In this document: piece by piece, positions 2 through 55,165 of the stretch
How the letters are laid out: every line of letters begins with the position of its first letter
Numbering within the stretch: position 1 is the first letter of the stretch
NCBI RefSeq assembly: GCF_003918875.1
Contig: NW_025764978.1
Span: forward strand, 248,001-310,645
Reading direction: 5' to 3'
From: Haliotis rubra
Lineage: Eukaryota
Length of the DNA: 62,645 nt
Translations under genes and position numbers: made by a program
The notes under the pieces: model-generated
What the model saw: the letters and a program-made list of their open reading frames with translations, nothing else
What the model was told of the DNA's origin: nothing
The model's database searches: none

Positions 2-1500
2 GGGCACAATAGAAACACCATTTCTTTTATTCAAAAGAAAGACTCCAAGGCTAGCGTTAGTAATACAACTATTGTACAACTCGGGCACAACAACATTGTA
101 TATATATACTTAGATGACAAACTCCCCACGAACATACTGCTAGGAGACACGGTCGTCGTGTACGTCCCCCCTGGGTGTGACGGCAGGCCCCGAGTGTTTG
201 TCTGCGAACAGATAGGACCTGACAACCAGATCGTCACCCACTGTCGCCACAAGTCGCCACGGATCTATGAACGACAGACATTCGGCAACTTCCGGTCACG
301 ACACTGTCACGTGATCAGATCTGTCCTGCTGCCAGCTGCTTCCGGCTCCAGTAAGAAAGGTAATTGTTGCTATGGACGGAGGGCACTTTGCGTCTGGCAT
401 TGTCAGTTATGTTACACTGTTAGTAAAGTAAAAAAATAAATTAACAAGGCTAACGGCCCAAGTACAGTGTAGATGCAAGTATCATATACGAAGTGGTGGC
501 ACAATAACACGAAATTATGCAGTTAACATCCAATTATAAATATAATAATAAAGAACGTAAGGCGATGACATCTTAGAACTATGTCGCACACAACAGTACC
601 GTATGTGTATAACATAAAACGTTTTGCATGGGTTCCCTGAGTCAAGAACATGACAATAATAAAGATAAAGAAGTTTGTGGTAATGTTCTGAGAGAGTGTA
701 CATTTTGTTTTTAAAAAATGGTATTGGAAAAGTATTTGTGTGTTAAAACATCATACATAGGGCACACTGACATAAAATGTAACTCGTCTTTATAATGTAT
801 TTACTAAAAGGATAACATGTAATGTTTAAAACAATACCCTCCGGCGAGCCAAGATTTTGTTTTCCTACCTTGGAATTCTCAAATTCTTAATAATGATGAG
901 TATTTTGTTCGGTCTTTTTAAAAAAATGTCTAAATACTTTTAGTAAAATTTCAATCATGTCACAATACGTTATCACTGAGTCTGCTACTAGCCGGGCTTG
1001 GTATCATTTGCATTTTAATTACTGTAACAATGTCATGATCATGATACACAATACAATAACAGTAACCGAAGTACAACAACATTACAACATTGAATTAATA
1101 ATGCTATTTAAGTGTCTGTAGTAGTTGTAGTCTAGGGCCCCTGAAAATTCAGAGTAAGAGTCCAAGGGACCCTCAAATACAAGGAATTGATGGGTAGATG
1201 ATTGACCATTGATTTAATCCAGTTTCATCCCACTCACTCACTCTTTCACTCAAGAAGAGTAAAATATATGAACAATTAACCAACTTAATGGACATTGAGT
1301 ATTTTCAAATTGTTTATATACATGTTTCCATCTTGTCAGCTGCGGGCCGTCATAAGCCTTTGACTCCCGGGGACTGCGATGTCGTGACCATCAAGCATGG
1401 TGGCTCTCATCGGACTCGCACAAGAAAAAGAGTGAAACCTCACAGCAGGAAGTACCCGCTTCTTCATCCCATCGGGGTCAAGGACACCAGAAAACTGTGA
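2..1500 (+). CDS. Tandem-RHIM protein, copy A (5'-truncated by window edge); exons <2-359 and 1340-1500
   Basis: Frame 2 is open from base 2 and reads GHNRNTISFIQKKDSKASVSNTTIVQLGHNNIVYIY... Donor AAAG|GTAATT after 359 (phase 1) and acceptor TTGTCAG|CT at 1340 join in frame to AAGRHKPLTPGDCDVVTIKHGG...RKL*. Same exon structure in copies B and C. Confidence 0.7.
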
Positions 1501-1600
1501 ACCCTGTCTGCCTGAGAAGATACATCTCTTGAACGTTTTGGTTTCTCGTATCGATTTACAGATAACATGTTTGAGCGGCATTTTAGAAGTTGTGACGCAC

Positions 1601-1769
1601 AATATAGAACAAAGTTATTATGGATAACAACTTCTTTATTTCAGTGAGTGCGACGTTTCGATACAGATTTTGTACCGTTGTCAAGCAAGACAACGGTACA
1701 AGAATCTGTATCGAAACGTCTCACTCACGAAATAAAGAAGTTGTTATCCATAAAAACATGTTCTATATT
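1601..1769. repeat. ~170-bp near-perfect palindrome downstream of the RHIM gene stop
   Basis: Arms AATATAGAAC...GACGTTTCGATACAGATT.TGTACCGTTGTC and GACAACGGTACAAGAATCTGTATCGAAACGTC...GTTCTATATT are reverse complements around a short loop. Second copy at 55266-55433. Confidence 0.85.
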
Positions 1770-1829
1770 TATTTATAGAGAGATTCTCAGGCAGTTTCGA
1801 AAAGATTACGCCTATTCCTGTTAGGGATA

Positions 1830-2940
1830 CCTTGTAAGCCATATTGGCTCAAGTCTAAGACATTTGTACATTCACTAGGCATAACTTACAATGCTAGTGT
1901 ACTTGTATATTGTACTGTCAGCTTGTATAACATATACACATGTATATTAATTATATACCATGTGATCCTGTAAGTCATATTGGTTCTATCAATGACAGCT
2001 GTAAGTTTATTATACATAAGTTGCAATGGTAGTTTATGTTGCACTGCCAACTTCTATAACATATACACACGTATATTTATTATATACCATGTGCTCCTGT
2101 AAGCCATATTGGTTGCATCAATGTCAGCTGTACGTTTATTATACATAAGTTGCAATGTTAGCATATATATTGTACTATCAGCTTGTATAGCATATACACA
2201 CGTATTTTTATTATATACCATGTGCTCCTGTAAGCCATATTGGTTGTATCAATGTCAGCCGTACATTCACTGTACATAACTTGCAATTTTAGCATCTATA
2301 TATTGTACTATCAGCTTGTATAACAGATACACACGTATTTTTATTATATACCATGTGCTACTGTAAGCCATATTGGTTGTATCAATGACAGCTGTTCGTT
2401 TATTATACATAACTTGCAATGTTAGCATATATATTGTAATGTCAACTTGTATAGCATATACACATGTGCATTTATTATATACCATGTGATCCTGTAAGCC
2501 ATATTGGTTATATCAATGACAGCTATAAGTTTATTATATATAACTTGCAATGGTAGTTTATGTTGCACTGCCAACTTCTATAACATATACACGCGTAGTT
2601 TTATTATATACCATGTGCTCCTGTAAGCCATATTGGTTGTATCAATGACAGCTGTTCGTTTATTATACATAAGTTGCAATGTTGGCATATATATTGTAAT
2701 GTCAACTTGTATAACATATACACATGTATATTTATTACATACCATGTGATCATGTAAGCCAAATTGGCTATATCAATGACAGCTGTAGGTTTGTTATATA
2801 TAACTTGCAATGTTAGCATATATTGTACTATCAGCTTGTATAACATATACACCTGTATTTTTATTATATACCATGTGCTCCTGTAAGCCTAAGGTTATGA
2901 CAGCTGTAAGTTTATTATACATAACTTGCAATGTTAGTAT
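1830..2940. repeat. ~131-bp tandem satellite, ~8 units
   Basis: Unit TACCATGTGCTCCTGTAAGCCATATTGG... recurs at 2087, 2218, 2351, 2482 and onward. Confidence 0.9.
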
Positions 2941-3145
2941 ATGTATTCTATTTCTAGAGGACATACATGAATATCTGGTATATGCTATGTACCCTTGTAG
3001 TCTTATTAATAGTCTTATATACAATCTTATGAAAGACATACAAATTTCTATGCTTAATATTACACCCTACCACTGCAGTGTGTCACATCGGTAAGGCACG
3101 AATCTGGATGTTAACGCGTATCACTGTAATTGATTTCTTAGTGTA

Positions 3146-5421: not shown

Positions 5422-6475
5422 CTATTTAATCGGTGGTGTAACAATAAATGTTATTGTGTCAATGTGTTCTTTCTTCAAAGACTCCATGGTGTCGGTCGGT
5501 TCCACCTGGCCTTTCTTAGCCTGACTGCAGCACACCACACTTCCAAATATAATCAGTCCAAGGAGCACCGTGCTCCCGAACCCGCCAACCGCCACCAGGA
5601 ACCCGCTGCCTAGACCGTCAGCTGACTCCACCGGAGTTGCAGTTGTAGTCGTTGACGTAGTTGGGTCGGAGATGGAGACACTTGAAGCTGAGATTATGGT
5701 CCCGTCGGGTTTCATCCAGGTCACATTCGGAAACAGATCACCCTTAATTTGACATGAAATGTGTAGCAGATCTCCCTGTTTCGGGTATAGAGATCCCCGC
5801 ACTTTAGAATTTTGGGGGGAATACAAGTGAAGTCCTTATCTTCTGCATGGTAAATCGTATGGTATTTCAGTACACTTGGAGCAGCGCATGCCGGAACATT
5901 GCCCGAGTACACGTAGTACATCACGCTCTAGTTGAGGTTCTTCAGCCACTGAATGTCGCATGTGCATCTCCAGGGGTTGTCTGAAAGATGGATGATCTGC
6001 AGCTTCTGGAAGATCAGCTCGAACGAATCTGGAATAGTTGCTAATTTATTGTCGGACAGGTCTAGAGTCATAAGGCTTGTCAAATGTTGAAATAATTGCA
6101 CAGATACCTTTTCAAAATTGTTTCCATGCAGATCAAGGTTTCTGAGATTTGTCAACCCAGTGAACATGGCACTGGAAGCACGTCCAAGGTTAGGGTCACC
6201 AAAAAATAGATCATGCAGGTTCTTCAAGGATGCAAATGCGTCATCGGCGATCTTACATCCCGTGTTTCCAGTCAGATCCACGAAGACAACATCATTTAAG
6301 CCATGGAAGATGCCAGTGTTTATCTGGGAGATCGTATTATGTTTCAGGGCAATGCGTTTTAGTTTAGTCAATCCTTGGAACAAGTCATAGTCCAACTTTG
6401 TCACCTCACTGTAAGTAACGTAGAAATCTTCAAGATTCGAGAACGCTGACAAAGCTGAGTGTTTCAATGTTGATA
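5422..6475 (-). pseudogene. LRR-LRRCT-Ig-TM receptor pseudogene, copy A
   Basis: LRRs (LTNLRNLDLHGNNF, LMTLDLSDNKL), LRRCT NPWRCTCDIQWL, Ig start (ISCQIKGDLFPNVTW), TM (FLVAVGGFGSTVLLGLIIFGSVV). Lesions: signal peptide and LRRNT missing, in-frame TAG at 5928-5930, 1-bp deletion near 5783, C-terminal half of Ig deleted. Confidence 0.85.
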
Positions 6476-7446
6476 CATGTCGGTGTTGAAAATGGGGTCT
6501 TTGTTATTGTAACGATTTTCGTGTCTCGAACCTGCATAAATAACGTTTGCGTACACGGAAAGATTTACGAAAACTGTCGATGTTTACCGAAGAGAGGCCA
6601 GACATTTATTCAAAGCAGAGGGTAGTGCTAATGCGAGGGTCAGTGTTCAAATATCAAAAGCGGGTAGACAAATTGAATACAATGAGCAGAAAGGTAAAAG
6701 AATAACCTACAAGCTCAAAACAATGTTTTGTGAAAAACGTAAGTTTTGATTGCACCGCACGTTAAAATAGTCGGGCTGTCCGGTTTTCGATAAGGCTTTG
6801 AGCATCGCGAGTGTCATCCTTTGAGTATTGTATGTAATGAGTGTAGCGGTAGAATTTTCTTAAAAATTCATTTCTTCACAGATCTCGTTCAAATTTGAAA
6901 TATAGGTTATTTATAACATAAAAAAGAACAATATACGATTGCAAAAGTCTAGATTTTTATTTGTATTGTCCAAACAGTGATTCGAACTCCTGTGGTTATA
7001 TAATGCATACTATAATCAATATTTTAACAAAGCGCGACACGCGACAATGCGACAAAGCGACATTTCATCAAAATGTTGCGTTGTCGCATTGGCGTGTCGT
7101 GTTTTATTAGTTACCGCGGAATTTCAAAATTATTACAAGGATGATTATGTTTAGATGTTTTTAAAGGGCTAAGATACACAGGGATCGAACTCAGAGTAAT
7201 AATAAATGTGGCCGTGTGGTTAAGAGATCTTGGTTAATGGAATGGATGTGTTGAAACTGGCCATTTTGCTGAAAATTATTTTGATTGAGTAGGTGTATGT
7301 TTGAAACGATACAAATGCATGTGTATCACTTGGTATATTATTATTATTATAAATAATATAGGATTCACATAGAATTCAAAAACAGACATCACAACACATT
7401 ATTGTAATGAAATATCTTGCTAATTTACCAAGTTCCCTAAACCTTG

Positions 7447-11636: not shown

Positions 11637-11659
11637 TATATATATAAATGTCGCTTCTG

Positions 11660-12110: not shown

Positions 12111-13236
12111 ATATGTGTGTTGCTATGTAGCTCAAACGAAACAGCTACCTCACGTTAAACCCCATTCACCTTTTCAAANNNNNNNNNNNNNNNNNNNNNN
12201 NNNNNNNNNNNNNNNNNNNNNNNNNNNNNNNNNNNNNNNNNNNNNNNNNNNNNNNNNNNNNNNNNNNNNNNNNNNNNNNNNNNNNNNNNNNNNNNNNNNN
12301 NNNNNNNNNNNNNNNNNNNNNNNNNNNNNNNNNNNNNNNNNNNNNNNNNNNNNNACCTATGAGGAAAAAGTAATTGCTTTGTATCAATCCGTTGAACCCA
12401 AATGTGTTCCAGGACATAAAAAACACATTTGTGCATCTTGATGAAAAACTCAAATCAATGCTGAAATCTAAAAAAATAATAAAGAGCAAAAGACAAAATC
12501 AGAATCTTAAAATGATGCTAACAAAAGCCAAATTTATTTTAAACAAACAGAATTTATTAAATCCTACTGTGTCTAACTGTGGAACGTGTCGACATATTGT
12601 TACAATACATTTATAACATAACATGTATACATTGCATGCTAACAAAAAAACACACAACATTTTAACATAGAATACCACAATATACCATAACGTACAGCTC
12701 AGGACATCACCACATAAGTTTATAACATAACTCAACTCAACAAATTTACATGAGGAAAGGGTCTCTTTTTAAGAATAACTCTATAATAAAACTCCCTGAG
12801 TAGCCGAGCCCTAGTTCATCAGATATGTATGTCGCGACAACTGAAAGATTCTGGTGATAGGTTACCGAAAACACGGAGTTAACATGATCAAACAAACCTA
12901 CTACAGAAAAAATATGTACCCACGATCTTGAAGCTTAAGCTGTTTTAAAATAGAATTAATTGAAAACAAAACCCAAACGCGTACGAGCAATGTGTCCGTG
13001 TTGGAAATGTCGGAAAGCGCACGTAAAATCTCTAAATCATCCTCACAGTCTCGAATGTCGGCTCAGGCGGGTTCAACAGGGCGCAGCAGTCAAATAGTGA
13101 CGACAATGATAAGAATAGACTACACAAGCTGGTCAAATCCTTTATTAGGAAAACAGGCTGTCACTTCAGAAGAAAAGAAGGTACACTGTTAGAACTTGGA
13201 TATCGCCGTTTATGTAACTGTACTTATCCCCAGAAA

Positions 13237-14427
13237 ATGGCCGGAAACGAGGTAGGTGGTGTGGGGACGAAGGACATGAACGTGACCCAGATTGGGTCAA
13301 ACAATGAGGTTCGGATACAGAAAACAGACATGGGGGACGTGAACATCAACATTATCTTAATCGTCCAGCCGGCAGACCCGAATCAGGCCCAGAGTAAGTA
13401 CAAACTGAAAGATTAGAAGACATTTTATTCAAGTCCTTCAAATTCACTTTGTTGTTAAAGGAGATCAGCTGAATATAAACTGAACTGTTTTTCGATAAAT
13501 GCCAATGTGAAAAAAAAGGTTTGTGTAAAAAAGAAATAGTAATAGCAATAGTCCTCTTATATGGTGCTCATATCAAGGAACATTGCCTACTCACGGCGTT
13601 ACGTACATCACTATCCCCGTTCACAGGACACTATCGTACTTTCCGATACTTTTTAAACTCCCTGGGGATCATACATCCATGCTGCCAGTTAGGCGCAATG
13701 AACTAAACACTCATATTGCCAGCACATGGGTACCCGACCTATTCGGTGTGTCGGTGGTAGTATTTGATATTATATTCATGATCAATTATTCATGATCAGA
13801 GCCCGGTCCATTTTCTTCCAAGTTAACTGTTTTTATTGGATGGTGTAGTTTCTACTGTTTGTTGATTTCACAGGATGGGATGCTTTAATTGCCCGAATCC
13901 CACTACCAAGAGTTATCTCCTGCCAAATGTTATATTATGTGTTTATATCTAGGATAAGTTATTCTTTGACAAAAAAAAGTAAAACGTTTTCAGGTTCGAG
14001 AAGCGTGAATGTGGTCTGCACGTTTAGAGACATATTGTGGTAGTTTGGGAAGTGATTATGTCAGTTTTACTCGTTAAGCAAATTTGTCTGTGTTTAATAG
14101 TATTTTGTTCTTTGTGCCTTAGATGTTAGAAAGACAGGTGGTGTTTGACCAGACCAGTAAAAAAAGTACAATTGTTTGAGGCATTTATTTTGTGTATGCA
14201 ATACCGTCATTAGAATTTCGGTTACACTTGGAAATGTACTGGTTATACACACGGTCGTAATATTGCTGTTGAAAGCGGCGTAAAACTAAACTCACTCACT
14301 CACCTTTGTTTCAGATTCTGTGGCAAATGGTGAAGTCCTTGGCAACTGCCGAGTGGAGATCAGCTGTCAGGGAAAGCGGAGAAACGCAGACCAAGGTCAG
14401 CACCAGGAAGGACGAAATTCCACATGA
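13237..14427 (+). CDS. 89-aa RHIM-like microprotein; exons 13237-13393 and 14315-14427
   Basis: Acceptor TTATCCCCAG lies just before AAAATGG. Donor CAGA|GTAAGT (phase 1), acceptor TTTGTTTCAG|AT. Spliced product: MAGNEVGGVGTKDMNVTQIGSNNEVRIQKTDMGDVNINIILIVQPADPNQAQNSVANGEVLGNCRVEISCQGKRRNADQGQHQEGRNST*. Not in the ORF track. Confidence 0.6.
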
Positions 14428-28875: not shown

Positions 28876-28879
28876 GATG

Positions 28880-37430: not shown

Positions 37431-38764
37431 GTTCAGCTGGTAAAAGGAAAATATACAAGGCTTTTGGAGAGGAGGAGGGAGAATGTTTTGGTGGTGGAAT
37501 AAAATGGAGGAGAGATCAAAGTACCATTGGAGGTGGAGATAGAGACGACATTGACGACGAAAGTGGAGGAGAAGACGTTGTTGATGGCAAGTAGGGAGGA
37601 AGGTGGGAGAGATTTCAGTATATGACTGGAGGTGGAGATAGAACTGTTCTTCGTGGAGGAAGAGAAAGACGAGACAAAGAGCACACTGTTGATGGAAAGC
37701 GGGGAGAATATGAGAGGTTTGGAGCAAGATGGGAGAGAGATGAGTACATCCTTGGAGGTGGAGGAGGCGCTGTTGTCGGTGGAGGAAGAGAAAGACGGTT
37801 CAGAGATGGCTCTGTTGGTGAAAAACAGGGAGAATGTGGTGATGGCGGTGGTATTATATGGAAGAAATACCATTACAACACTGAAGGAATGGATAAAGGA
37901 AACGATGACGTTTGTGGAGGAATAGAGGTGGGACTTGGAGATGGTGCTGTGGTGGGAATGCAGGGAAAATGTGATAGCAATGAAGACGAAAGGAGAGGAG
38001 ATCGTTGTACTGGAGGAAGAGAAGGAGATGGCACTGTCAAAACAGCGCAGCCAGAATATGTTGATGGTGGCAGAATGCGGACATGAGATTATATCAAAAG
38101 AGAGAGAATTACGAAAAGACAGAACAGCGAAAGAGGACAAAGACTGAGCGTAGATGATGGCGACAGACACAGAACAGATGCTGTTGATGGAGATGGACAG
38201 AACCTGATGGTGGGCATCGTTGCAGATGTTACCAATGTGCAGAACGGCCATTCCAACATCATAGTACATCAAACAGTACATGTCAAGAATCTGACTGGTA
38301 TGTATTTTCGTAATGATTTACCGTATGCGTTAACTGTAGATCCATTCTCTTTATATGATACATGTCATTAGCGCGACAACAGATGTTCAGAGTGTTAATA
38401 TTTTATAATGTTGAAGGAAATAACCTGTTGAATAGAATATCTGTTCTTCTAGACCTATATATTTCAGACAGCACATATGCTTTTCTCCTTTTGATATACA
38501 AGAAATGCGTTTCGCTAAAAATGACTTAACAATTTTGGAAATTGTGTAAATCTGCTTGTTTGAATCTCTGGATGTTTCTTTACTCAACATCTCCCATGAA
38601 TGACATTGTGTTGATGGAAAGGGTCATACATGGTAGAATTGTAATTACTCAGAATTAGATTTGAATGCAATTACAAACAAAGCCAGGGGATTTAGATAGC
38701 CTAAAGGTCCTCTGTTGATTATTGTTTCAGTAATGCCAAGACGTGTTGGAAGAAGAAGGAAGCT

Positions 38765-39110
38765 TCGGCCAAGGTCACGGATGGTAGCCACAAGATGTAC
38801 ACAGACTGTTGGTGAGGGGGCCAAGGTCACGCGAAATACAGACACGGTTGATGAGGTGGCCAAGGTCACGCGACGTTCACAGACTGTTGGTGAGGTGGCC
38901 AAGGTCACGCGACATACACAGACTCTTGGTGAGGTGGCCAATGTCACGCGACATACACAGACTGTTGGTGAGGTGGCCAAGGTCACGCGACATACACAGA
39001 CTGTTGGTAATGTGGCCAAGGTCAAGCGACATACACAAACTGTTGGTGAGGTGGCCAAGGTCACACGACGTACACAGACTGTTGGGGAGGTGGCCAAGGT
39101 CACACGTCAA
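38765..39110. repeat. Second, unrelated 39-bp minisatellite, ~8-9 copies (TQTVGEVAKVTRH)
   Basis: Unit GTGGCCAAGGTCACGCGACATACACAGACTGTTGGTGAG. Confidence 0.9.
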
Positions 39111-39277
39111 ACCAAGTCTGTGAGGCGCTACTTGAGGCCACACTGCCAAGATCAGAAGGTCAAAAACAATCTCACGATTTGGTTCCACGTTTTAGTTCAA
39201 ATCGAGATCCTGGTGGTCCTGATCGTGATGGTGTTCATGCAGCATTAATTCAATCCGAACATTTGCTGCATATAAAC

Positions 39278-41255: not shown

Positions 41256-41683
41256 ATCAAAGTGTGTTGGCACATGGCGTTTGCCAGCGTCTCCTTGCAC
41301 CCGACACGGCAACTCTCATATACCCACGTGTACATACACATGTAGCGTTACCGCACAACTCAAATCAATATGTATATTGATTGACCCACTGCAAAGGCTG
41401 CAGCAAACGGCTGGTGAGGTGAACCCATGAATGCAGCTCTCTGTCTGGGTTGCTGACTATTTAACATGTACATTATACAGGTCAAGATATATAGAGTGAC
41501 TTTCTTCAATCAGAATAATGGATGTGGTTCTCAAGACCTCCCTGGCTCTGGTATGAAGTTATTATTCCATTAAATCGTTTTAAGATTTGTCGTTTGTAAA
41601 GCTGATAATCGTTCTATATTTCATCCCAGAGACAACGGCGAGTGGTGACATACGAACCAGGGATCTGTTCAAACTCCGGGGCA

Positions 41684-44600
41684 ATGTCTGAAGCTAGGGG
41701 GGCGTGCTACGTCATACCGTCTGGCTTCGAGCCAAACAAACAATTAAAGTACAGTTCTCAGCATATGAATGCCCAAAATACATGTCTTTTACGATCAGAG
41801 AAAGGTAGAAAAGGACAGTTGAAACATGCCAACCAGTCTTTACAATCTGACCAAAAGCCAGACAGCTGTAAGAAGCATCTCTGTACTCGTCCTCAAATCG
41901 ATATACGGCGCATTGTACAAATCGGGCACAATAGAAACACAATTTCTTTTATTCAAAAGAAAGATAGCAATGCCAGTGATAGCAATGCAACTATTGTACA
42001 ACTCGGAAACAACAACATTGTATATGTATATTTAGGTGACAAACTCCCTTCGAACATACTGCTAGGAGACACGGTCGTCGTGTACGTCCCCCCTGGGTGT
42101 GACGGCAGGCCCCGAGTGTTTGTCTGCGAACAGAGAGGACCTGACAACCAGATCGTCACCCACTGTCGCCACAAGTCCCCACGGATCTATGAACGACAGA
42201 CATTCGGCAACTTCCTGTCACGACACTGTCACGTGATCAGATCTGTCCTGCTGCCAACTGCTTCCGGCTCCAGTAAGAAAGGTAAGTGTTGCTGTGGACG
42301 GACGCCACTTTGGGTTTGTTGTTGTCAGCTATGTTACATTGTTAGTAAAGTAAAAAAAAAACATTAAAAAGGCTAACAGCCCAAATTGTAGATATATGTA
42401 TCTACAGTGTAGATATATGTATCATAGACAAAGTGGTGGCACAATACCACGATTTTAGAAAAAAAACAGCTAAAATTCAAAGAACGTTTACAAGGCGAGG
42501 ACATCTTTGAACTATATCGCACATAACTGTAGTGTATGCGTCTAGATCTGCTATAAAACATAAGGTTTCAATGCGTTCCCCGAGCCAAGAACATGATAAT
42601 GATAAAGGTTGCAGTCTTAGAAATTTGTTGTAATTTTCTGAGAGAGTGTACCTTTTTTACATTTTTGTGTTGTAAAACATTTTGTGTGTTAAAACATCAC
42701 ACATATGACACATGGACATAAAATGTAACTCGTCTTCTATGAGGTTTTTCGGGGGGAGTTGGGAAAACATTGAATTTTACCAAAAAATGTTATTTTAACT
42801 CAATTTTAAATTCTCGTAACTTATGCATCTAGAATATTGTGAGCACAGATGAAAGTTTATTTAAAGGAATATATCCTTATGTGTACTTACCTGTATAATG
42901 TATGAGCTTGGTTGGCTATAGATCACCTATAAAATATGTCTGAAAAACTCATCCAGGTTTCCATCCCTTGACTTGTCTGTATATATCTTGTCGTCATGGA
43001 AGAAGATCTACATCCGTATTGATGACACTGATGGGGTTGTGTTGGCCATAGCTGCATCGAGCATTCTCAATCCCTTCCAATATTTCACAGGCTGTGGCAG
43101 TGTGTCAAAGAAGACCTCGTGGAATGCATGGAACGCTTTTCCTGAACATACAGGCACCTTTATTTCCCTCGCTTGTCCACCACTTGAAATTACTAATGCG
43201 CAGATTCATCAGCTTGAGATATTTGTTGAGCTGCTGTATGACAGAGCAAGCAACCTCATGAAAGTGAATGAAGCAAGAAAGCATTTGTCCGCCACGAAGG
43301 GGAGAACACTGGACAATATTCCCCCAACAGAATTAGCTTTGATCCAACATAACTTTGGACAACTCTCCTGAAGACATGAAAGAGCTGCCAGGAATTGCTG
43401 AAATGCATGTGTAAAAAAATGTTCTGGTCCATGTGTGTAAAAGCATTTCTCATGTGCACTGCACTTTTCTGATTCAGTCAAACTAGATACAATAACACTC
43501 AAGAAATGAATGCGTAACCTACCAGATTGATGAGATAGCTACTTTGAAATTGATGTTGAAATGAAACATGTTTGCATTGATTTTGATCTTTTTTCATAAG
43601 TGATCTATAGCCCACCAAGCTCATACATTATACATGTAAGTAAATCTATTGATATATTCCTTCAAATAAACTTCCATCTGTTCCCACAATATTCTAGATA
43701 CATAATTTATGAGGATTTAAAATTGGGTTAAAATAACATTTTTGGGGGAAAATTCAATTTTTCCCCACTCTTTCCCCCCAAAATGAAAAATGGCCCACAT
43801 CTGCAAGGCTTCTCGTATTGAATTTGCAAAGAAATGATAAAAATATATTAGATCATGGGGTGATCTCATACTTATTTATGATGTAGTCTATATGGCGGCC
43901 ATTTTTCCCATTTTCGGAAAGTCATGATATATATTGACTTCCGTAGAACTAACCGTTAAAGTTAAAATAACATGTATAGCTGAAAAATGACCAGCTATGA
44001 ATTTCCTACAATTTGATATATGACCTATGAGAATTAGAGAGTTTTAAAAGAAGTTATGATGAAAATAGTACCAAACAAAAAGATTTTATTATCACTTTTC
44101 CCCAAAAAATTATGAAAAATATCAAAAATAGGCGAGGCCTCTCGATCTTTATTTAAAAAGAAGGGTATAAGCTACAATCATGCCAAATTTCATGCTTGTA
44201 GCACAAAGTGCATAATTTGATTACTTATCCGCTGGGCTATATTCTTGATAAGATCTTGATAAGTATCTTGTTTGGTCTCTTTAGTGTCTGTGAAGCCAAG
44301 GTTTAATTGCAAAAGTTAAGTTTAGTTTAGAATAAAAATCAAATATAGTGATGGAACTCACGTAAACTGACATGCATGTCATGGTGATCCAAAACTGGCG
44401 ATTGATGCTCAGATGATAGAATATTGATTTTATACATCTTCATCCCACTCACTCATGATCACTCACTCACTCACTCACACACAAGTATGGTGACCTGTGA
44501 TTTGTATTTGTTTTTAATCTAGTTTTAACAAATCCATGATAATCTAGTAATTTTACTGTCCTTCGTTGACAGGGTTTTATGAATCATCTGTATTTATCAT

Positions 44601-45028
44601 GAATTTAGAACTAGTTTTAGTTACGATATGGCTGAAATATTGCCAATGTGACTTAAAATGTGAACTCACTCACCCACACACATTTACACACTCACCCCCC
44701 CTGCCCACTCAACCACCAACTCACTCACTCACTCAAGAAGAGTAAAATATATGAACAATAAACGAACATAATAGCCATTGGAGTAGACACTGAGTTTTTT
44801 CGAAACGTGTATAAATATGTTTCCTTCTTGTCAGCTGCGGGCCGTCATAAGCCGTTGACTCCCGGGGACTGCGATGTCGTGACCATCAAGCATGGCGGCT
44901 CTCATCGGACTAACACAAGCAGAAGAGTGAAACCTGATAGCAGGAAGTACCTCGGGGGGTCATCCCATCGGGGTCAAGGTCACCAGAAAACTGTGAACCC
45001 CGTGTGCCTGAGAATAGGCATCCCTTAG
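41684..45028 (+). CDS. Tandem-RHIM protein, copy B (~263 aa from MSEARG); exons 41684-42281 and 44835-45028
   Basis: Motifs RIVQIGHNRN (41915) and TIVQLGNNNIV (41996). Donor AAAG|GTAAGT, acceptor TTGTCAG, phase 1 in frame. A possible upstream coding mini-exon 41518-41550 (MDVVLKTSLAL) would splice in phase 0 to the acceptor at ~41628. Confidence 0.75.
42744..44239 (+). mobile_element. Academ-like DNA transposon remnant in the intron of RHIM gene B
   Basis: Fragments DTDGVVLAIA, FTGCGSVS, KKTSWNAWNAFPE, LEIFVELLYDR, VNEARK and LDNIPPT followed by a Cys-rich tract, matching the XPG-like plus Cys architecture I recall for Academ. Long inverted repeats 42780-42940 / 43590-43760. Terminus CCGCTGGGCTA. 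Absent from copies A and C. Confidence 0.65.
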
Positions 45029-45091
45029 ACTTTCATTTAGCCTCAGAAGAGGATCTGTGTTCCTGTGGTCCACGCATATTCCAGTTAGGAA

Positions 45092-46170
45092 TACCTTGTA
45101 AGCCATATTGGCTCAAGCCTAAGACATTTGTACATTCACTAAGCATCAATTGCAATGTTAGTATAAATATAGTGTACATGTACATTTATCATATATTATG
45201 TACCCTTGTAAGCCATATTGGTTGTATCAATGACAGCTGTAAGTTCTTATACATCACTTGCAATGTTAGCATATATATTGTAATGTCTGCTTGTATAACA
45301 TATACACATGTAAATGTATTATATACCATGTGCTCCTGTAAGCCATATTGGTTGTATCAATGACAGCTGTAAGTTCTTATACATCACTTGCAATGTTAGC
45401 ATATATATTGTAATGTCTGCTTGTATAACATATACACATGTAAATGTATTATATACCATGTGCTCCTGTAAGCCATATTGGTTATATCAATGACAGCAGT
45501 ACATTCACTATACACAACTTGCTATGCTAGTATATATGTATATTGTACTGCAACCTTGTATAACATATACACATGTATATTTATTATATACCATGTGCTC
45601 CTGTAAGCCATATTGGTTATATCAATGACAGCTGTAAGTTTATTATATATAAGTTGCAATGGTAGTTTATGTTGCACTGCCAACTTCTATAACACATACA
45701 CATGTATATTTATTATATACCATGTGATCATGTAAGCCATATTGGTTATATCAATGACAGATGTAAGTTTATTATATATAAGTTGCAGTGCTAGAATATC
45801 TATTGTACTATCAGCTTGTATAACACATACACATGTGTATTTATTATATACCATGTGATCCTGTAGGTTATATCAATGTCAGCTGTACATTCACTATACA
45901 TAACTTGCAATGTTAGCATATCTATTGTACTATCAGCTTGTATAACACATACACATGTGTATTTATTATATACCATGTGATCCTGTAGGTTGTATCAATG
46001 TCAGCTGTACATTCACTATACATAACTTGCAATGTTAGCATATCTATTGTACTATCAGCTTGTATAACACATACACATGTGTATTTATTATATACTACGT
46101 GTTCCTGTAATCCGTATTGGTTGAATCAATGACAGCTGTAAACCTATCATACATAACTTGCAATGCTCGT
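45092..46170. repeat. ~131-bp tandem satellite, copy B
   Basis: Same unit as 1830-2940. Confidence 0.9.
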
Positions 46171-48307
46171 ATATGTATTGTCTTTCTAGAGGATATACAT
46201 GAATATCTTGTATATACTATATGCCCTTGTAGTCTTCTAAATAGTCCTATATACAATCTTATGAATGACATACAAATTTGTATGCATAATATTACACCGA
46301 ACCGTGAGACAAAATCCTGTAAAATCATGATGACATACAGTTTACCGCTATCAGATTGAAAGCCTCGTTGTGCCACTTCTGTTGAAATCCGTGTCACAAA
46401 AAAACAGGCGTGTCATCATTTGCACATGTGACACACATTTAGACATTGAACAAATTTTTAATAATTTTAGTTTTGTTTCTCGTGTATATGAGTGTTTGTC
46501 TTAGAGTGAGGCCTGGATAAAGCAAATACATGCATTCATTAATTGACTGCTGGGTTATGTACATATTGATGGGATTTAGGAACCTGAATTCAGTATCATT
46601 GAGTGGATTTCTTAGTGTATAGCTGAGACACACAGAGATGTGGTATGTTACCATTCTGGTTGCACCATCCTTTTTATGTTTTTTTTTATTATCTCAACAC
46701 AGTTTCGAGTAATGTGCTTGTGTACATGAATAAAATGTCTAATGAATCTATATCATTATTATTCTATTATTTAAAACTATCTGTATTCAGACATATAGGT
46801 CCAAGTCCTTTCAAACAATACATCTAGAAATTGTACCTATATTGCAAACACATAGTAGACTTTCAGTCGTATTTGTACACTTTGGATATATATATAACTA
46901 AGCTGCTAAAACTTTTGCATCTAATCGATATATCAATGGAGTAAAATCACACATGGTGCAAGTTAGTAAGTACTCATGGACCGATAAGAACGATTGTCTG
47001 AAGTATCCAAGATCACTCCATCATAGCTGTATTAGAGACTGATGTCCGGGTAACGATTTGGTTGGTTGGTTGGTTTGTTGTTTAACGCCCAACTCAGCAA
47101 TATTCAAAGTATGTGGAGGCTGTCTGTTAATAATCAACTCTTGACCAGGCAATCCAGTGATCAACATCATGTGCATCGATCTACGCAACTGGGATACGAT
47201 GACATGTGTCAGCGAGTTTGCGAGTCTGACCCGCTCCCGCTCCCGTTAATCGCCTCTTACGACAAGCATGGGTTACTGCAGACCAATTCTAACCCGGATC
47301 TTCACGGGTAATGAATAATCTTCCAAAATGAAACACAAAGGAAATATCGATAAACATCAGAGCATGTGCTATATAAGAACCATTATTTGATGCCATCTAC
47401 AACCAAAATAATAATGATTATTTTTCGAATCATCCGTTCGCCGCAAATTAATCATCCAACATAACTGTTAGGAACTGTTTTAACAAAGTCAAAGCCAACT
47501 GAACACAACTAAGCTAAAGTGTTGCATGATTGAAAGCAGAAGAATTGCAAGCGAGCGTGGCGAGAACATTTTGTGTGTGTAAACTCTAGTAAGTGAACCT
47601 GTGGCATGGTACGTCATGTGACCGACCTAAATCAGACCGATCCCGTGCCACAACGTCATACTGCAGCAATCCTATCTCCATCGTGGCTACCTAGCTGAAT
47701 CATCGACTACAGCAGCGATTCTAGGATTGCCAAAGACATAAAACCAGATATTGGTGAACCACCTTTGATAGGTTGGGGTCAGAGCCAGACCTGCTGTAAC
47801 ACGTGTACCAATGTTCACTGTACATCTTTACACCATGTGGCTCGTTTCGTAAGAACTTTGTCAACTGGCTGTTTTGAGAACGTAATGACGAAGATTATGT
47901 ATTACTTTCAGTTTTATTCAGTTTGATCTTCAAAGGGTTTGTAATTGTAACTTTCACACGAACGTCCTGTAAATAACAATGATGCATGGTATGTTCCATA
48001 CATTTTAGGGCTCAACAAATATTTTAAAATATTACATGGTAAATTTCATAGAACCTTGTCTTGTAGTGCCTTGTGTTACTTGTGTTTCATGGTTTGATAT
48101 ATTCAATAATATTTCAATTACCACCGAGGCTAATTTACAGCATCCTCGATAATCTCCAGGGTATACGTTCCGATAAATCTCCACTACTAGAACGCCTACC
48201 CAGGAGATTATCGAGGATGAATGTATAGAAGTGTACCCTAACTGAACCCGCCACGAATCGTTATCAGTTCCAATCTGGGACTCGAACCCATGACAAGTGG
48301 CCTAAGT

Positions 48308-49506
48308 TTAAGCCCATTTAAACCCACCTAGAACGTCAGCTGACTCCACCGGAGTTGCAGTTGTAGTCGTTGACGTAGTTGTGGGAATTTGAACATAAAC
48401 GCCGAATGTTTTCTCGTCCTTTCCTTTATCGTTGGCAGCCTGAACTGTCCATAGCCCGTCATGAGAAGCCTCAGCAGTCAAAACAGTGCTGACATCCCTT
48501 GTTGTCGTATACCGGGGATCGAAGATGGAGACACTTGAAGCTGAGATTATGGTCCCGTCGGGTCTCACCCAGGTCACATTCGGAAACAGATCACCCTCAA
48601 TCTGACATGAAATGTGTAGCAGATCTCCCTGTTTCACGGTATAGACATCCCCGCATCTTCTGCATGGTAAATCGTATGGTATTTCAGTACACTTGGGGCA
48701 GCGCATACCGGAACATTGCCCGAGTACACCAAGTACATCACGCTCTGGGTGAGGTTCTTCAGCCACTGAATGTCGCATGTGCATCTCCAGGGGTTGTCTG
48801 AAAGATGGATGATCTGCAGCTTCTGGAAGATCAGCTCGAACGAATCTGGAATAGTTGCTAATTTATTGTCGGACAGGTGTAGAGTCTTAAGGTTTGTCAA
48901 ATGTTGAAATAATTGCACAGATACCTTTTCAAAATTGTTTCCATGGAGATCAAGGTTTCTGAGATTTGTCAACCCAGTGAACATGGCACTGGAAGCATGT
49001 CCAAGGTTAAGGTCACCCAGAAATAGATCTTGCAGGTTCTTCAAGGAAGCAAATGCGTCATCGGCGATCTTACATCCCGTGTTTCCAGTCAGATCCACGA
49101 AGACAACATCATTTAAGGCATGGAAGATGCCAGTGTTTATCTGGGAGATCTTATTATGTTCCAGGGCAATGCGTTTTAGTTTAGTCAATCCTTGAAACAA
49201 GTCATCGTCCAACGTTGTCACCTCACTGTAAGTAACGTAGAAATCTTCAAGATGCGAGAACGCTGACAAAGCTGAGTGTTTCAATGTTGATAGAGAGTTT
49301 CTGTTATTGAAGGAGCCAAGCAGGTTAATGCTGGTGGTGTTTGCAGGTAGACCTATCGGAAATGACGTCATCTTTGGCTGACACGTCACATAATCTGAAA
49401 CTGCACAGATACAGTTGCTGGGGCAGGTTTGTGACGTCATATATCCGAAGACACAGACCAGTAGGAACGCCACAGAATACAAACAATGGACGTAGTAGTT
49501 GACCAT
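48308..49506 (-). pseudogene. LRR-Ig receptor copy B: intact signal peptide, LRRNT, LRRs and full Ig; frameshifted and lacking TM
   Basis: MVNYYVHCLYSVAFLLVCVFGYMTSQTCPSNCIC..., LRRs, NPWRCTC. A frameshifting deletion at ~48657 removes DKDFTCIPPKILK. Full Ig (...HDGLWTVQAANDKGKDEK) in another frame. A ~220-bp deletion removes TM and tail. Confidence 0.85.
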
Positions 49507-52080: not shown

Positions 52081-52797
52081 AAAACTAGTGACTGTAAATA
52101 ATGTCTAAATCTTCAAAGACAATACAGACTTTCGATAATGAGAAAATAACATATCACATTGTTTATTCTATTAGTCACATGATCATAACGGGTCCGGGTA
52201 TGGAGACGGGTACCCGGGTCCAACTCATTACCCAACCGTCCCAGCCCTGGTAAGTACGACATACCTAGGAGTCTGCCAGTGGCATCTAGTCGTCGGGATC
52301 TTTTAGATAGTTACTGTCACCGTGACCTATTAAGCGTCATCGCTCATACTGTCAGTCAAACTGTGGCAATTAAAATGCAAGGAATTGAAACATGCAAGCT
52401 TTTCTTGATAATGTCGCTGATCTATTCGAGTTTACTACGGTTATAACGAATAGGGTCCACCTCCTAGTTCGTTCGTTATCTGCATTCCGACTAAAGGTAC
52501 AGCAAGCATCCGTGACCCCTAAAACAGTCCGTGACATCCTTCATTTCGTTATAAACATAGTTGACTGTACAGCAAGGGCACTCCTTTAAAACACCACATG
52601 TGTTAAATCTTTACCTGTCTCCATTATTTACTGATTGTCAATAATCTAAGGTATGAACAGAAACTTGACAAGGACAAATGCAGCATGACAATACTGATTA
52701 TGTTCAATGGCTGGCATCTGCGAAGCTTGAGATCGATAGCATCAGGTGACATTTTGCAAGCCTGCACGGTAACACGCACACTTCAGAATGCACCTAG

Positions 52798-52934
52798 CTG
52801 ATTGGTTAACGATGACGAAGCTATTAGAAACAGGACAGTATATAAGAGCTGACATCGCACTTATTGCGTGTTTTATTCAACACGGGGTTTGCAGCTAAGG
52901 TTGTTTCGACCAGGCTCTGTGGTAGTCAGGACAG
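52798..52934 (+). promoter_or_regulatory. Putative promoter and first exon of tandem-RHIM gene C
   Basis: CTGATTGG, TATATAAG (52839) and donor CAG|GTAGGT. Confidence 0.5.
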
Positions 52935-53771
52935 GTAGGTGCCACTTTCTTCATTTTACTTTCCCAGCTTGTCCAAGACTGAATCCGCCATGAAGGTTAC
53001 CTTCAAATAATTCTACAAGGAAACACACAAATATTGAACAACTGCAAAACAACATTTCTGTTATCCTGTGAAATCTACCCTAAGGCTGACCCCACCTTAT
53101 CACTATAACAAGAGCATTTGTCAATGATTCGCTATCAAACTGGGGACGACTACAGCGTTCACGCGGAAGGCCCGATTCCCCATATGGTAACAACGTGTGA
53201 AGCCCATTTCTTGTGTCCCCCGGCGTGATATTGCTGGAATACTGCTAACAGCGGCGTAAAACTAAACTCACTCACTATCAAGCTGTGTTGGCATATGGAG
53301 TTTTCCAGCTTATCCTGGCACCCGTCACAACCACATGTGAGGACACGGCAACTCTCATATACCCACGTATACATACACATATAGCATTACTGCATATCTC
53401 AAATCAATATGTTACTATAGATTGACCCACTGCAAAGGCTGCAGCAAACAGCTGGTGAAGTGAACTCATGTCTGTCCTGGTTGCTGCCTCTTTAACATGT
53501 AATTTATACAGGTCAAATTACGTGTGTACGTTTGTATTAAGGGTCAACATGTACGTAGATGTCTAAGAATTATAGAGTGACTTACTTCAATCAGAGTATT
53601 GGATGTCCTTCGCAAGACCTCTCTGGCTCTGGTATGCAATATAAGTTACTATTCTATGAAATCGTTTTAAGATTTGTCGTTTGTAAAAGCTGCTATTCTT
53701 TCTACATTTCATCACAGAGACAACGGCGAGTGGTGACATACGAACCAGGGATCTGTTCAAACTTCGGGGCA

Positions 53772-55165
53772 ATGTCTGAAGCTAGGGGGACGTACCACGT
53801 CGCACCGTCTGGCTTACAGACGAACAAACAATTAGAGTACAGTTCTCAGCATATGAATGACCAAAATACATGTCTTTCACGGTCAAAGAAAGGTAGAAAA
53901 GGAAAGTTGAAACATGCCAACCAGTCTTTACAATCTGACCAAAAGCCAGACAGCTGTAAGAAGCGTCTCTGTAATCGTCCTCAAATCGATATACGGCGCA
54001 TTGTACAAATCGGGCACAATAGAAACACAATTTCCTTTATTCAAAGGAAAGACTCCAATACTAGCGTTAGCAATACAACTATTGTACAACTCGGGGACAA
54101 CAACATTGTATATATATACTTAGATGACAAACTCCCCACGAACATACTGCTAGGAGACACGGTCGTCGTGTACGTCCCCCCTGGGTGTGACGGCAGGCCC
54201 CGGGTGTTTGTCTGCGAACAGAGAGGACCTGACAACCAGATTGTCACCCACTGTCGCCACAAGTCGCCACGGATCTATGAACGACAGACATTTGACAACT
54301 TCCGGTCACGACACTGTCACGTGATCAGATCTGTCCTGCTGCCAACTGCTTCCGGCTCCAGTAAGAAAGGTAAGTGTTGCTGTGGACGGAGGGCACTTTG
54401 CGTCTGGCATTGTCAGTTATGTTACACTGTTAGTAAAGTAAAAAAATAAATTAACAAGGCTAACGGCCGAAGTACAGTGTAGATGCAAGTATCATATACG
54501 AAGTGGTGGCACAATAACACGAAATTGTGTAGTTAACATCCAATTAAAAATATAATAATAAAGAACGTAAGGCGATGACATCTTAGAACTATATCGCACA
54601 TAACAGTACCGTATGTGTCTAGCATAAAACGTTTTGCATGGGTTCCCTGAGTCAAGAACATGACAATAATAAAGATATAGAAGTTTGTGGTAATGTTCTG
54701 AGAGAGTGTACATTTTGTTTTTAAAAAATGGTATTGGAAAAGTATTTGTGTGTTAAAACATCATACATAGGGCACACTGACATAAAATGTAACTCGTCTT
54801 TATAATGTATTTACTAAAAGGATAACATGTAATGTTTTAAACATCAAGGAATTGATGGGTAGATGATTGACCATTGATTTAATCCAGTTTCATCCCACTC
54901 ACTCACTCACTCACTCAAGAAGAGTAAAATATATGAACAATTAACCAGCATAATGGACATTGAGTATTTTCAAATTGTTTATATACATGTTTCCATCTTG
55001 TCAGCTGCGGGCCGTCATAAACCGTTGACTCCCGGGGACTGCGATGTCGTGACCATCAAGCATGGTGGCTCTCATCGGACTCGCACAAGAAGAAGAGTGA
55101 AACCTCACAGCAGGAAGTACCCGCTTCTTCATCCCATCGGGGTCAAGGACACCAGAAAACTGTGA
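53772..55165 (+). CDS. Tandem-RHIM protein, copy C (~252 aa from MSEARG); exons 53772-54369 and 55005-55165
   Basis: IVQIGHNRN (54003) and IVQLGDNNIV (54084), with the same splice sites as A and B. The frame stays open upstream to 53559. Confidence 0.75.

What the first reader, a model, noticed from the sequence alone, without database searches (positions are those of the whole stretch)
2..55165. Cluster of five same-strand 'RHIM-only' genes: a candidate invertebrate amyloid-signalling (adaptor or decoy) locus
Seen: five + strand gene models carry RHIM-like motifs. These are IVQIGHNRN plus IVQLG[H/N/D]NNIV in three copies (A is 5'-truncated by the window), VTQIGSNNEV at 13.28 kb and TNVQNGHSNII at 38.24 kb. 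In each, the motif-bearing exon is followed by a phase-1 intron and one last exon. No kinase, death, TIR, CARD or Z-alpha domain is recognisable. Known: the RHIM core (I/V)Q(I/V/L)G followed by Asn drives amyloid assembly in RIPK1, RIPK3, ZBP1 and TRIF. Cryptic RHIMs act in Drosophila PGRP-LC/IMD, where the small protein Pirk is an inhibitor. Inference: a lineage-specific, expanding family of stand-alone RHIM nucleators or decoys, sitting among immune-type receptors.
Basis: partly seen in the sequence, partly recalled or inferred. Interest (0 to 1): 0.85.

Follow-up and report, generated by a model that had tools for sequence, protein, structure and literature searches.

The report
Abalone-only gene family with RHIM-like motifs
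Three of the five proposed genes are real, transcribed copies of a small gene family found only in abalone. Its protein carries two strictly conserved motifs resembling the amyloid-forming RHIM of cell-death kinases, but that it works as a RHIM is still unproven.

Summary
The window is from Haliotis rubra (blacklip abalone).

**What holds**
- Copies A, B and C are paralogues of one two-exon gene with a conserved phase-1 intron.
- They sit in 9-12 kb segmental duplications and are annotated in RefSeq as "uncharacterized protein".
- An RNA contig joins the two exons.
- The family is found only in Haliotis: at least 7 loci in H. rubra, 2 each in H. rufescens and H. asinina, and 2-3 proteins in H. 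cracherodii.
- The product is about 250 aa and basic, with no signal peptide and no Pfam domain above threshold.

**What does not hold**
- The loci at 13.28 kb (tetrad TQIG) and 38.24 kb (VQNG, inside minisatellites) are unrelated and unsupported.
- So there are three genes of one family, not five.

**RHIM reading**
- Both tetrads (VQIG, VQLG) and their Asn residues are invariant inside a fast-diverging stretch, with 0 non-synonymous changes against 3-5 synonymous ones.
- Motif 2 aligns 7/13 with the human RIPK3 RHIM.
- Against this, Pfam RHIM scores 8-12 bits (cut-off 20).
- PDB-wide searches do not retrieve RIPK1/3.
- Motif 2 runs straight into a conserved beta-rich domain.
- AlphaFold gives no confident fold.

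**Verdict**
- This is a candidate stand-alone tandem RHIM-like protein, at about 40% confidence.
- The neighbouring genes are LRR-Ig adhesion-type genes, not clearly immune.
- Another note of this scan (s1-344841) reports a similar stand-alone protein elsewhere in this genome. Whether it belongs to this family was not checked.

The parts
2..359 (+). Copy A, motif-bearing coding exon. It is cut at its 5' end by the window start. Motif 2 (IVQLGHNN) is at 71-94, and the tail of motif 1 (GHNRN) at 2-16.
   Evidence: Equals RefSeq-type protein P0003.
1340..1500 (+). Copy A, last coding exon (AGRHKPLTPGDCDVVTIKHGG... plus a basic tail and the stop).
   Evidence: Family HMM hit at E 5.5e-25.
41684..42281 (+). 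Copy B, coding part of the motif exon. Motif 1 is at 41912-41938 and motif 2 at 41993-42016.
   Evidence: Equals P0010, and the gene is called at this place in the public record.
44835..45028 (+). Copy B, last exon. It follows a 2553-nt phase-1 intron, and its C-terminal tail is frameshifted relative to A and C.
53718..54369 (+). Copy C, motif exon. The likely acceptor is at 53716-53717 and the ATG at 53772. Motif 1 is at 54000-54026 and motif 2 at 54081-54104. The ILLGDTVVVYV strand starts at 54144.
   Evidence: RNA contigs cover 53714-54367. Equals P0007.
54370..55004 (+). Copy C intron: GT..AG, phase 1, 635 nt.
   Evidence: Depth is zero in runs X1-X3, and contig X3 record 20 skips it. The intron position and phase are the same in H. 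asinina and H. rufescens.
55005..55165 (+). Copy C, last coding exon including the stop codon.
5431..6491 (-). Unit A: a copy of the LRR-Ig transmembrane gene that lies tail-to-tail with the small gene. It is broken into tblastn pieces in different frames.
48311..49506 (-). Unit B: LRR-Ig gene copy, covering residues 1-412 in two frames. The RefSeq model P0017 runs from here into the reverse strand of the minisatellite and is chimeric.
58800..59852 (-). Unit C: LRR-Ig gene copy, in four tblastn pieces.
13036..13413 (+). ORF holding VTQIGSNNEV. It is NOT part of the family, and no evidence supports it as a gene.
38207..39248 (+). Annotated 176-aa model holding TNVQNGHSNII. It is NOT part of the family. 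It lies between or on 39-nt minisatellite arrays (36298-37432 and 38798-39103).

Best explanation
**Shown**
- The window holds three tandemly duplicated members (A, B, C) of a Haliotis-restricted, transcribed, two-exon gene family.
- The product is about 250 aa, basic (pI about 10) and has no signal peptide or membrane segment.
- Its layout is as follows:
  - a variable hydrophilic N-terminus;
  - two invariant RHIM-type cores, (I/V)VQIGxxxN and IVQLGxxN;
  - a fast-evolving linker of variable length between the cores;
  - a strongly conserved, beta-rich region of about 100 aa containing Cys and His;
  - a basic tail.

**Inferred mechanism**
- The two cores act as homotypic beta-strand (RHIM/HET-s-like) assembly motifs.
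- Through them the protein would self-associate, or co-assemble with other RHIM-bearing proteins of the abalone such as RIPK1-like or CARD-RHIM proteins known from other molluscs.
- The conserved C-terminal region would supply the output or a partner-binding function.
- Whether it nucleates or blocks such assemblies cannot be told.
For: **Real gene.** An exon-exon RNA contig exists and the intron has no depth. The phase-1 intron is conserved in three species. dN/dS of the core is 0.3-0.4 between paralogues. RefSeq models match.

**Restricted and expanding.** An exhaustive phmmer search of 1.84 billion proteins found only Haliotis.

**Motif under selection.**
- 11 of 12 core positions are invariant in 12 proteins, against 5 of 34 for the rest of residues 71-116 (Fisher 3e-6).
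- The core codons show 0 non-synonymous but 3-5 synonymous differences per species pair, while their surroundings have dN 0.16-0.67.
- The linker carries 7-12 aa indels.

**RHIM likeness.**
- Both tetrads are canonical.
- Motif 2 aligns with the RIPK3 RHIM of PDB 7DAC at 7/13 identical and 10/13 similar, E 0.001 for the single comparison. It aligns with RIPK1 at 11/16 similar, E 0.012.
- RHIM is the only Pfam family hit recurrently, in 7 of 12 members.

**Other support.**
- The two AlphaFold runs gave mean pLDDT 34.5 and 38.7, so no confident globular fold.
- Spiralian RIPK1 homologues with a functional RHIM (zebra mussel; PMC12119088), bivalve CARD+RHIM proteins (PMC12452177) and tandem RHIMs in invertebrates (PMC4262963) are on record.
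Against: - Pfam RHIM scores 8.1-12.4 bits against a cut-off of 20, and only 7 of the 22 model positions align.
- Single-sequence and profile searches of the PDB with the motif region find no RIPK1 or RIPK3 chain at E<=10. By contrast, the RIPK3 and RIPK1 RHIMs find each other at E 0.011-0.8.
- At window level the RIPK3 bait hit reaches only E 0.08.
- Motif 2 continues without a break into a highly conserved hydrophobic region, with 57 of 104 positions invariant. Typical RHIMs have disordered flanks instead.
- Internal-repeat similarity is not significant (p 0.06 and 0.10).
- ESM Atlas neighbours are noise, with scores below 0.55 and no RHIM cluster.
- No partner was identified, and nothing is known about the tissue or stimulus behind the expression.
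Confidence: 0.4

Rival explanations
1. This is an orphan folded beta-rich protein. The VQIG/VQLG-x-x-N stretches are ordinary strand-turn elements of one monomeric domain spanning about residues 72-220, possibly a small beta-solenoid or sandwich stabilised by Cys/His. The resemblance to RHIM is convergent, and the function lies in the conserved C-terminal part rather than in amyloid-type assembly.
For: - The most conserved part of the protein is residues 117-220, not the motifs.
- Motif 2 is contiguous with that part.
- Both AlphaFold models draw a series of beta-hairpins through residues 73-163.
- Pfam RHIM is below threshold, and no RHIM chains are retrieved from the PDB.
- Gly and Asn in turns are typically the most conserved residues of beta-solenoids (general knowledge).
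Against: - There is no confident fold, with mean pLDDT 34.5-38.7.
- Between motifs 1 and 2 lies a fast-evolving linker with 7-12 aa indels, which is unusual inside a compact domain.
- The motif region and the C-terminal domain have different divergence histories.
- The match to RIPK3 extends over 13 residues, beyond the tetrad.
Confidence: 0.4
2. This is a basic nucleic-acid- or chromatin-binding protein. The lysine/arginine-rich N-terminal patch and the C-terminal tail would bind RNA or DNA, and the Cys/His residues would bind zinc. The RHIM-like cores would be incidental.
For: - pI is 9.6-10.6, with 40-46 K+R residues, 8-12 Cys and 8-15 His.
- Basic runs are present: KKGRKGKLKH and RTRTRRRVKPHSRKY.
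- ESM Atlas neighbours include viral core proteins, but only at noise-level scores.
Against: - No zinc-finger or nucleic-acid-binding family is found in Pfam.
- The basic N-terminus is absent from the H. rufescens and H. cracherodii members P0002, P0008 and P0009.
- This reading does not explain the absolute conservation of the two cores.
Confidence: 0.12
3. These are not functional genes. The ORFs would be open by chance inside recently duplicated DNA, and the RefSeq models would be prediction artefacts.
For: - The copies lie in young segmental duplications at 86-97% nucleotide identity.
- Copy B has a frameshifted tail.
- N-terminal dN/dS exceeds 1 between paralogues.
Against: - A spliced RNA contig exists.
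- The ORF, intron position and phase are kept in H. asinina, H. rufescens and H. rubra despite dS up to about 1.
- dN/dS is 0.2-0.6 across species.
Confidence: 0.03

Closest known systems
RHIM of RIPK1/RIPK3 (Pfam PF12721; fibril structures such as PDB 7DAC, 8Z93 and 9HR6)
   Same: The (I/V)Q(I/V/L)G tetrad is canonical and is followed by Asn. Abalone motif 2 (VSNTTIVQLGDNN) aligns with RIPK3 (IYNCSGVQVGDNN) at 7/13 identical. The tetrad stays fixed while its surroundings evolve fast, as reported for RIPK3 (PMC12119088).
   Different: - It is below the Pfam cut-off.
- There is no kinase or death domain.
- The upstream I-Y-N-x-x-G of RIPK1/3 is only partly present.
- The C-terminal flank is a conserved beta-rich region rather than disordered sequence.
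- No reciprocal retrieval occurs in PDB searches.
[quoted passage not shown]
   Same: Two related cores lie 27 residues apart, start to start, and are joined by a hydrophilic, poorly conserved loop of variable length. This layout has been proposed to form a two-rung beta-solenoid.
   Different: The similarity between the two repeats is not statistically significant here (p 0.06). There is no Z-alpha, HeLo or NLR partner domain, and no adjacent gene carries a matching motif.
Small RHIM-like regulators and decoys: Drosophila Pirk, and the herpesvirus RHIM proteins M45 and ICP6 (review PMC13506858)
   Same: The protein lacks any catalytic or death-fold domain, so its only recognisable feature is a RHIM-like element. 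That is the architecture expected of an adaptor or inhibitor.
   Different: No sequence relationship was detected. No viral relatives were found in IMG/VR. No functional data exist.
Mollusc RHIM-bearing proteins: RIPK1 homologues of zebra mussel and other spiralians (PMC12119088) and bivalve CARD+RHIM proteins (PMC12452177)
   Same: They are from the same phylum and are plausible interaction partners through a shared tetrad.
   Different: Those proteins combine the RHIM with kinase, death or CARD domains and are widely conserved. This family is genus-restricted and has none of these domains. Whether Haliotis has such partners was not tested here.

Membership tests
RHIM (RIP homotypic interaction motif, PF12721) | Core tetrad (I/V)-Q-(I/V/L/C)-G | tested here: met
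   VQIG and VQLG are present in A (second motif only), B and C. They are invariant in all 12 family proteins of 4 Haliotis species. The 13.28 kb (TQIG) and 38.24 kb (VQNG) loci do not meet this feature.
RHIM (RIP homotypic interaction motif, PF12721) | Score at or above Pfam's gathering cut-off (20 bits) | tested here: not met
   Whole protein scores 8.1-8.4 bits and a 75-aa piece 12.4 bits (E 0.12). Model positions 12-18 of 22 align. 7 of 12 members hit at E 0.66-2.8.
RHIM (RIP homotypic interaction motif, PF12721) | Similarity to established RHIMs beyond the tetrad | tested here: inconclusive
   Pairwise BLASTP gives 7/13 identical with RIPK3 (E 0.001) and 11/16 similar with RIPK1 (E 0.012). 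PDB-wide searches with the motif or its profile give no RIPK chain at E<=10, whereas RIPK3 finds RIPK1 at E 0.011. The window-level E is 0.08.
RHIM (RIP homotypic interaction motif, PF12721) | Core conserved while flanking residues diverge | tested here: met
   11/12 core positions are invariant against 5/34 neighbouring positions (p 3e-6). There are 0 non-synonymous changes in the core against 29 in the rest, with 5 synonymous changes in the core, for H. rubra versus H. rufescens (p 4e-5).
RHIM (RIP homotypic interaction motif, PF12721) | Motif embedded in natively unstructured sequence | tested here: inconclusive
   The N-terminal side and the inter-motif linker are hydrophilic and variable. 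The C-terminal side of motif 2 is a conserved hydrophobic beta-rich region. AlphaFold confidence is too low to decide.
RHIM (RIP homotypic interaction motif, PF12721) | Tetrad-dependent amyloid assembly and heterotypic binding to another RHIM protein | not testable with these tools
   This needs ThT/EM, AAAA mutants and co-assembly assays.
RHIM (RIP homotypic interaction motif, PF12721) | Presence of partner RHIM proteins in the same organism | not tested
RIPK1-like RHIM proteins are reported for other molluscs (PMC12119088). Other notes of this scan claim RHIM-like motifs elsewhere in this genome, but they are unchecked.
HET-s-type two-rung beta-solenoid (tandem pseudo-repeats) | Two mutually related repeats of about 21-27 residues joined by a flexible loop | tested here: inconclusive
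   The best internal match is IVQIGHN / IVQLGDN at offset 27, with p 0.057 against column shuffles. The second is VQLGDNNIVYI / ILLGDTVVVYV, with p 0.10. The loop is variable in length.
Amyloid signalling gene pair (receptor and effector sharing a motif, encoded side by side, as in fungi and bacteria) | Adjacent gene carrying the same motif | tested here: not met
   The conserved neighbour is an LRR-Ig transmembrane gene. Its cytoplasmic tail of about 35 aa holds no tetrad.

The most novel reading that the evidence does not exclude
Abalone have evolved a genus-specific, copy-number-expanding family of stand-alone tandem-RHIM proteins. These would nucleate or poison amyloid-type signalling by mollusc RIPK1-like or CARD-RHIM proteins, for instance in antiviral or antibacterial responses. 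The novel conserved C-terminal domain would act as the effector or regulatory module. That would make them the first host-encoded 'RHIM-only' regulators outside insects.
Probability: 0.25. Interest if true: 0.75.

Novelty: new variant of a known kind. Interest (0 to 1): 0.45.

Why it matters
RHIM-type functional amyloids are central to vertebrate necroptosis and NF-kB signalling and to insect IMD signalling. For molluscs, RHIM-bearing RIPK1 homologues and CARD+RHIM proteins are on record (PMC12119088, PMC12452177), but I found nothing published on abalone.

A small, easily expressed protein with two canonical tetrads under strong purifying selection would give a tractable entry point for two questions. 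One is whether lophotrochozoans use amyloid-type immune signalling. The other is how such motifs are regulated by stand-alone proteins.

If the rival reading holds, it is simply an uncharacterised abalone orphan family with a conserved new domain, of local interest only.

Tried and rejected
1. **Five-gene cluster.** Rejected: the 13.28 kb and 38.24 kb loci match neither the family HMM nor Pfam RHIM. The former has no protein match anywhere, and the latter is a minisatellite-based model. I could not rebuild the annotated 176-aa model as two exons.
2. **Small gene nested in an intron of an LRR gene.** Rejected: the 485-aa model P0017 is chimeric and runs into the antisense minisatellite ORF. The intact relatives are single-exon genes lying tail-to-tail with the small gene.
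3. **Structure route.** Two AlphaFold runs, on the full length and on the core, gave mean pLDDT 34.5 and 38.7. No fold search was run because low-confidence models give meaningless matches.
4. **Remote homology.**
   - phmmer against 1.84 billion representatives found only Haliotis.
   - The profile search added no relative outside Haliotis.
   - PDB searches by sequence and by profile found no meaningful match.
   - ESM Atlas gave only noise-level neighbours.
   - IMG/VR viral contigs held no relative.
5. **Motif shared with the neighbouring receptor's tail.** There is no tetrad. Only a weak TISFI/TITFI likeness was seen, judged to be chance.
6. **Literature.** Searches on the LOC identifiers and on RHIM in abalone returned nothing. 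The supplements of PMC12119088 hold no Haliotis entry.
7. **Transposon origin of the family.** No Pfam, TE or viral signal is found in the protein. The nearby DDE_Tnp_4 fragment (10211-10915) is unrelated.


Full report
**Origin and layout**

The window is part of Haliotis rubra scaffold QXJH01001077.1 (names). A self-comparison shows three copies of a 9-12 kb unit. Unit A (1 to about 9241) matches unit C (54011-62645) at 95-97% identity. Unit B (40069-49292) matches C at 86-95%. Each unit carries a small gene on the + strand and an LRR gene on the - strand.

**Checking the observation**

For copy C, the motif exon ends at 54369 (AAG|GTAAGT) and the last exon starts at 55005 after an AG.

In three small runs labelled RNA-like (X1-X3), contigs cover 53714-54367 and 55003-55148 at a depth of about 14-18. 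Depth across the intron is zero. One 587-nt contig (X3, record 20) carries both pieces with the intron removed. The fourth run laid, X5 (kind unknown), has depth along the whole stretch, intron included.

That RNA contig differs from copy C at six positions. At five of them it carries the letter of copy A, and all changes keep the frame. So an A-like member is the one seen as RNA.

Copies A and B have the same junctions. The three models equal RefSeq-type proteins P0003 (A), P0010 (B, with a frameshifted tail) and P0007 (C), all named "uncharacterized protein".

The three assembly gaps lie outside all five models. The flanks of the first two stay collinear with unit C. The third could not be tested. 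No gap was filled.

**The two other loci**

A profile of the family does not match the 13.28 kb ORF (E 5) or the 38.24 kb ORF (E 9). Pfam RHIM gives nothing for either at E<=10.

The 13.28 kb ORF has no match in 5.8 billion protein clusters, which include this species' own annotation. Its tetrad is TQIG, a variant reported as inactive for NF-kB activation when placed in human RIPK3 (PMC12119088).

The 38.24 kb motif is VQNG. It begins a 176-aa annotated model whose second part is a 39-nt minisatellite (38798-39103). A 29-copy array (36298-37432) lies just upstream. Here all frames are open.

The finding therefore reduces to one family with three copies in the window.

**Distribution of the family**

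HMMER against 1.84 billion representative proteins found only two clusters, both from Haliotis. The profile search and the cluster listing gave these counts:
- H. rubra: seven loci on three scaffolds.
- H. rufescens: two tandem genes.
- H. cracherodii: two or three proteins.
- H. asinina: one annotated gene, plus an unannotated second copy at L002:4756-5241.

The phase-1 intron sits at the same codon in H. asinina (228 nt), H. rufescens (725 nt) and H. rubra (635 and 2553 nt). No viral relative was found.

**The protein**

It is about 250 aa with pI 9.6-10.6. No hydrophobic segment is long enough for a signal peptide or membrane span. Pfam finds no kinase, death-fold, TIR, CARD or Z-alpha domain.

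The alignment shows four zones:
- **N-terminus (1-70):** no invariant positions. It is absent from some members and has dN/dS about 2 between paralogues.
- **Motif zone (71-116):** two invariant cores separated by a linker that carries 7-12 aa indels.
- **Conserved zone (117-220):** 57 of 104 positions are invariant, including five Cys.
- **Tail:** basic.

Two AlphaFold runs gave mean pLDDT 34.5 and 38.7, with only a string of hairpins drawn. There is therefore no fold to compare.

**Is it a RHIM?**

*For:*
- Both tetrads are canonical.
- I used baits whose letters were confirmed in solved RIPK3 and RIPK1 fibril chains. Motif 2 aligns with RIPK3 over 13 residues, 7 identical and 10 similar (E 0.001 for that one comparison). 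It aligns with RIPK1 over 16 residues, 11 similar (E 0.012).
- RHIM is the only Pfam family that recurs, in 7 of 12 members.

The strongest evidence is evolutionary. Within the motif zone synonymous divergence is high (dS 0.6-1.1). Non-synonymous divergence of the non-core positions is also high (dN 0.16-0.67). Yet the twelve core codons (I77-G81, N85, I104-G108, N111) show no non-synonymous change and 3-5 synonymous changes in every pair. The Fisher test gives 4e-5 for H. rubra versus H. rufescens. At protein level 11 of 12 core positions are invariant against 5 of 34 neighbours, p 3e-6.

*Against:*
- The Pfam score is 8-12 bits against a cut-off of 20, and only 7 of the 22 model positions align.
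- Searches of all PDB sequences with either motif, or with a profile of the motif zone, bring up no RIPK chain at E<=10. The RIPK3 and RIPK1 RHIMs, by contrast, find each other at E 0.011-0.8.
- Among the window's own six-frame segments the family is the best hit of the RIPK3 bait, but only at E 0.08.
- Motif 2 passes directly into the conserved hydrophobic zone, unlike RHIMs with disordered flanks (PMC4262963).
- The internal repeat is not significant (p 0.06).

**Context**

The - strand neighbour is an LRR plus Ig-domain type I membrane protein. Intact relatives are P0014 (466 aa) and P0015 (474 aa). Sources name these proteins LRRC15-, LRRC4C- or FLRT2-like.

The tail-to-tail pair of small gene and LRR-Ig gene, 3-5 kb apart, is kept in three further places:
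- H. asinina;
- H. cracherodii;
- a second H. rubra scaffold.

This may be plain genus-level synteny. The receptor's short cytoplasmic tail has no tetrad. All three LRR-Ig copies in the window fall into tblastn pieces in different frames, and the RefSeq model P0017 is chimeric. "Sitting among immune-type receptors" is therefore not supported.

**Mechanism and comparison**

The shown part is a real, young, expanding, abalone-only gene family whose two RHIM-type cores are under strong purifying selection.

The inferred part is that these cores mediate homotypic beta-strand assembly of the RHIM/HET-s kind. Partners would be RHIM proteins of the type documented in other molluscs (PMC12119088, PMC12452177). 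Tandem RHIMs joined by loops are known in ZBP1 and in invertebrate proteins (PMC4262963).

I put this reading at about 0.4. Equally likely is that the cores are strand-turn elements of an orphan folded domain.

It is not filed as a member of Pfam RHIM because the threshold test failed. It may still work like one.

**Unexplained**

Exon 1 is a mosaic. The motif zone is far more diverged at synonymous sites than the C-terminal zone:
- The neighbouring LRR-Ig gene gives a baseline dS of 0.23.
- The C-terminal zone has dS 0.16-0.34 between species.
- Between the two H. rufescens paralogues the C-terminal zone has dS 0.04 and the motif zone 0.91.

Gene conversion of the 3' half, or long-kept lineages of the 5' half, would fit this pattern.

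Noticed in passing
window 36298-37432 and 38798-39103: Two 39-nt minisatellite arrays (29 and 7.8 copies) are open in several frames. RefSeq-type models use them as coding sequence: a 176-aa product, and the tail of the 485-aa 'FLRT2-like' P0017. These are probably annotation artefacts.
   Followed up: partly
window 10211-10915 (-): A 234-aa ORF carries a DDE_Tnp_4 (PIF/Harbinger-type) transposase domain at E 7e-18. It is likely a transposon remnant lying between unit A and the 13 kb ORF.
   Followed up: no
window 53182-53378, 55152-55545, 56925-57318, 57516-57900: Contig depth is very high in all four runs, up to millions in X5. Many joints and loose ends fall at 53276, 57091 and 57645. These look like high-copy interspersed repeats flanking copy C, also present in RNA-type runs.
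   Followed up: no
window 1826-2947, 45176-46181, 55685-56683: A tandem array with a period of about 131 nt lies 0.2-0.5 kb downstream of each small gene and is shared by all three units.
   Followed up: no
L003:14953-15492 and 33549-33998 (H. rufescens); window exon 1: Exon 1 shows mosaic divergence. Between the tandem H. rufescens paralogues, dS is 0.91 in the motif zone but 0.04 in the C-terminal zone. Between species the values are 0.6-1.1 and 0.16-0.32. This suggests partial gene conversion or old lineages of the 5' half.
   Followed up: partly
L003 near 15481: In the H. rufescens gene for P0013 the usual AAG|GTAAGT donor reads ACAG|GAAAGG in this assembly, and the intron is about 14.4 kb. 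Either the donor is non-canonical or this is an assembly or annotation problem.
   Followed up: no
L002:4756-5241 and 6045-6197 (H. asinina): A second, unannotated copy of the small gene lies 5 kb upstream of P0012. It is 80% identical over exon 1 and has a degenerate last exon.
   Followed up: no
window 5431-6491, 48311-49506, 58800-59852 (-): All three LRR-Ig gene copies are split into tblastn pieces in different frames, while the small genes stay open. This is either pseudogenisation or indel errors of the draft assembly.
   Followed up: partly
window 23714-24537: An 81-nt tandem repeat of about 9-10 copies lies inside the EGF/YWTD-type receptor locus. It is the subject of another note of this scan.
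   Followed up: no
P0014 residues 450-466, and P0015/P0016: The LRR-Ig cytoplasmic tails end in a conserved H(I/F)D(T/K)ITF(I/V)V(T/A)P motif. It has a faint likeness to the NTISFIQ strand after motif 1 of the small protein, which is probably chance.
   Followed up: no
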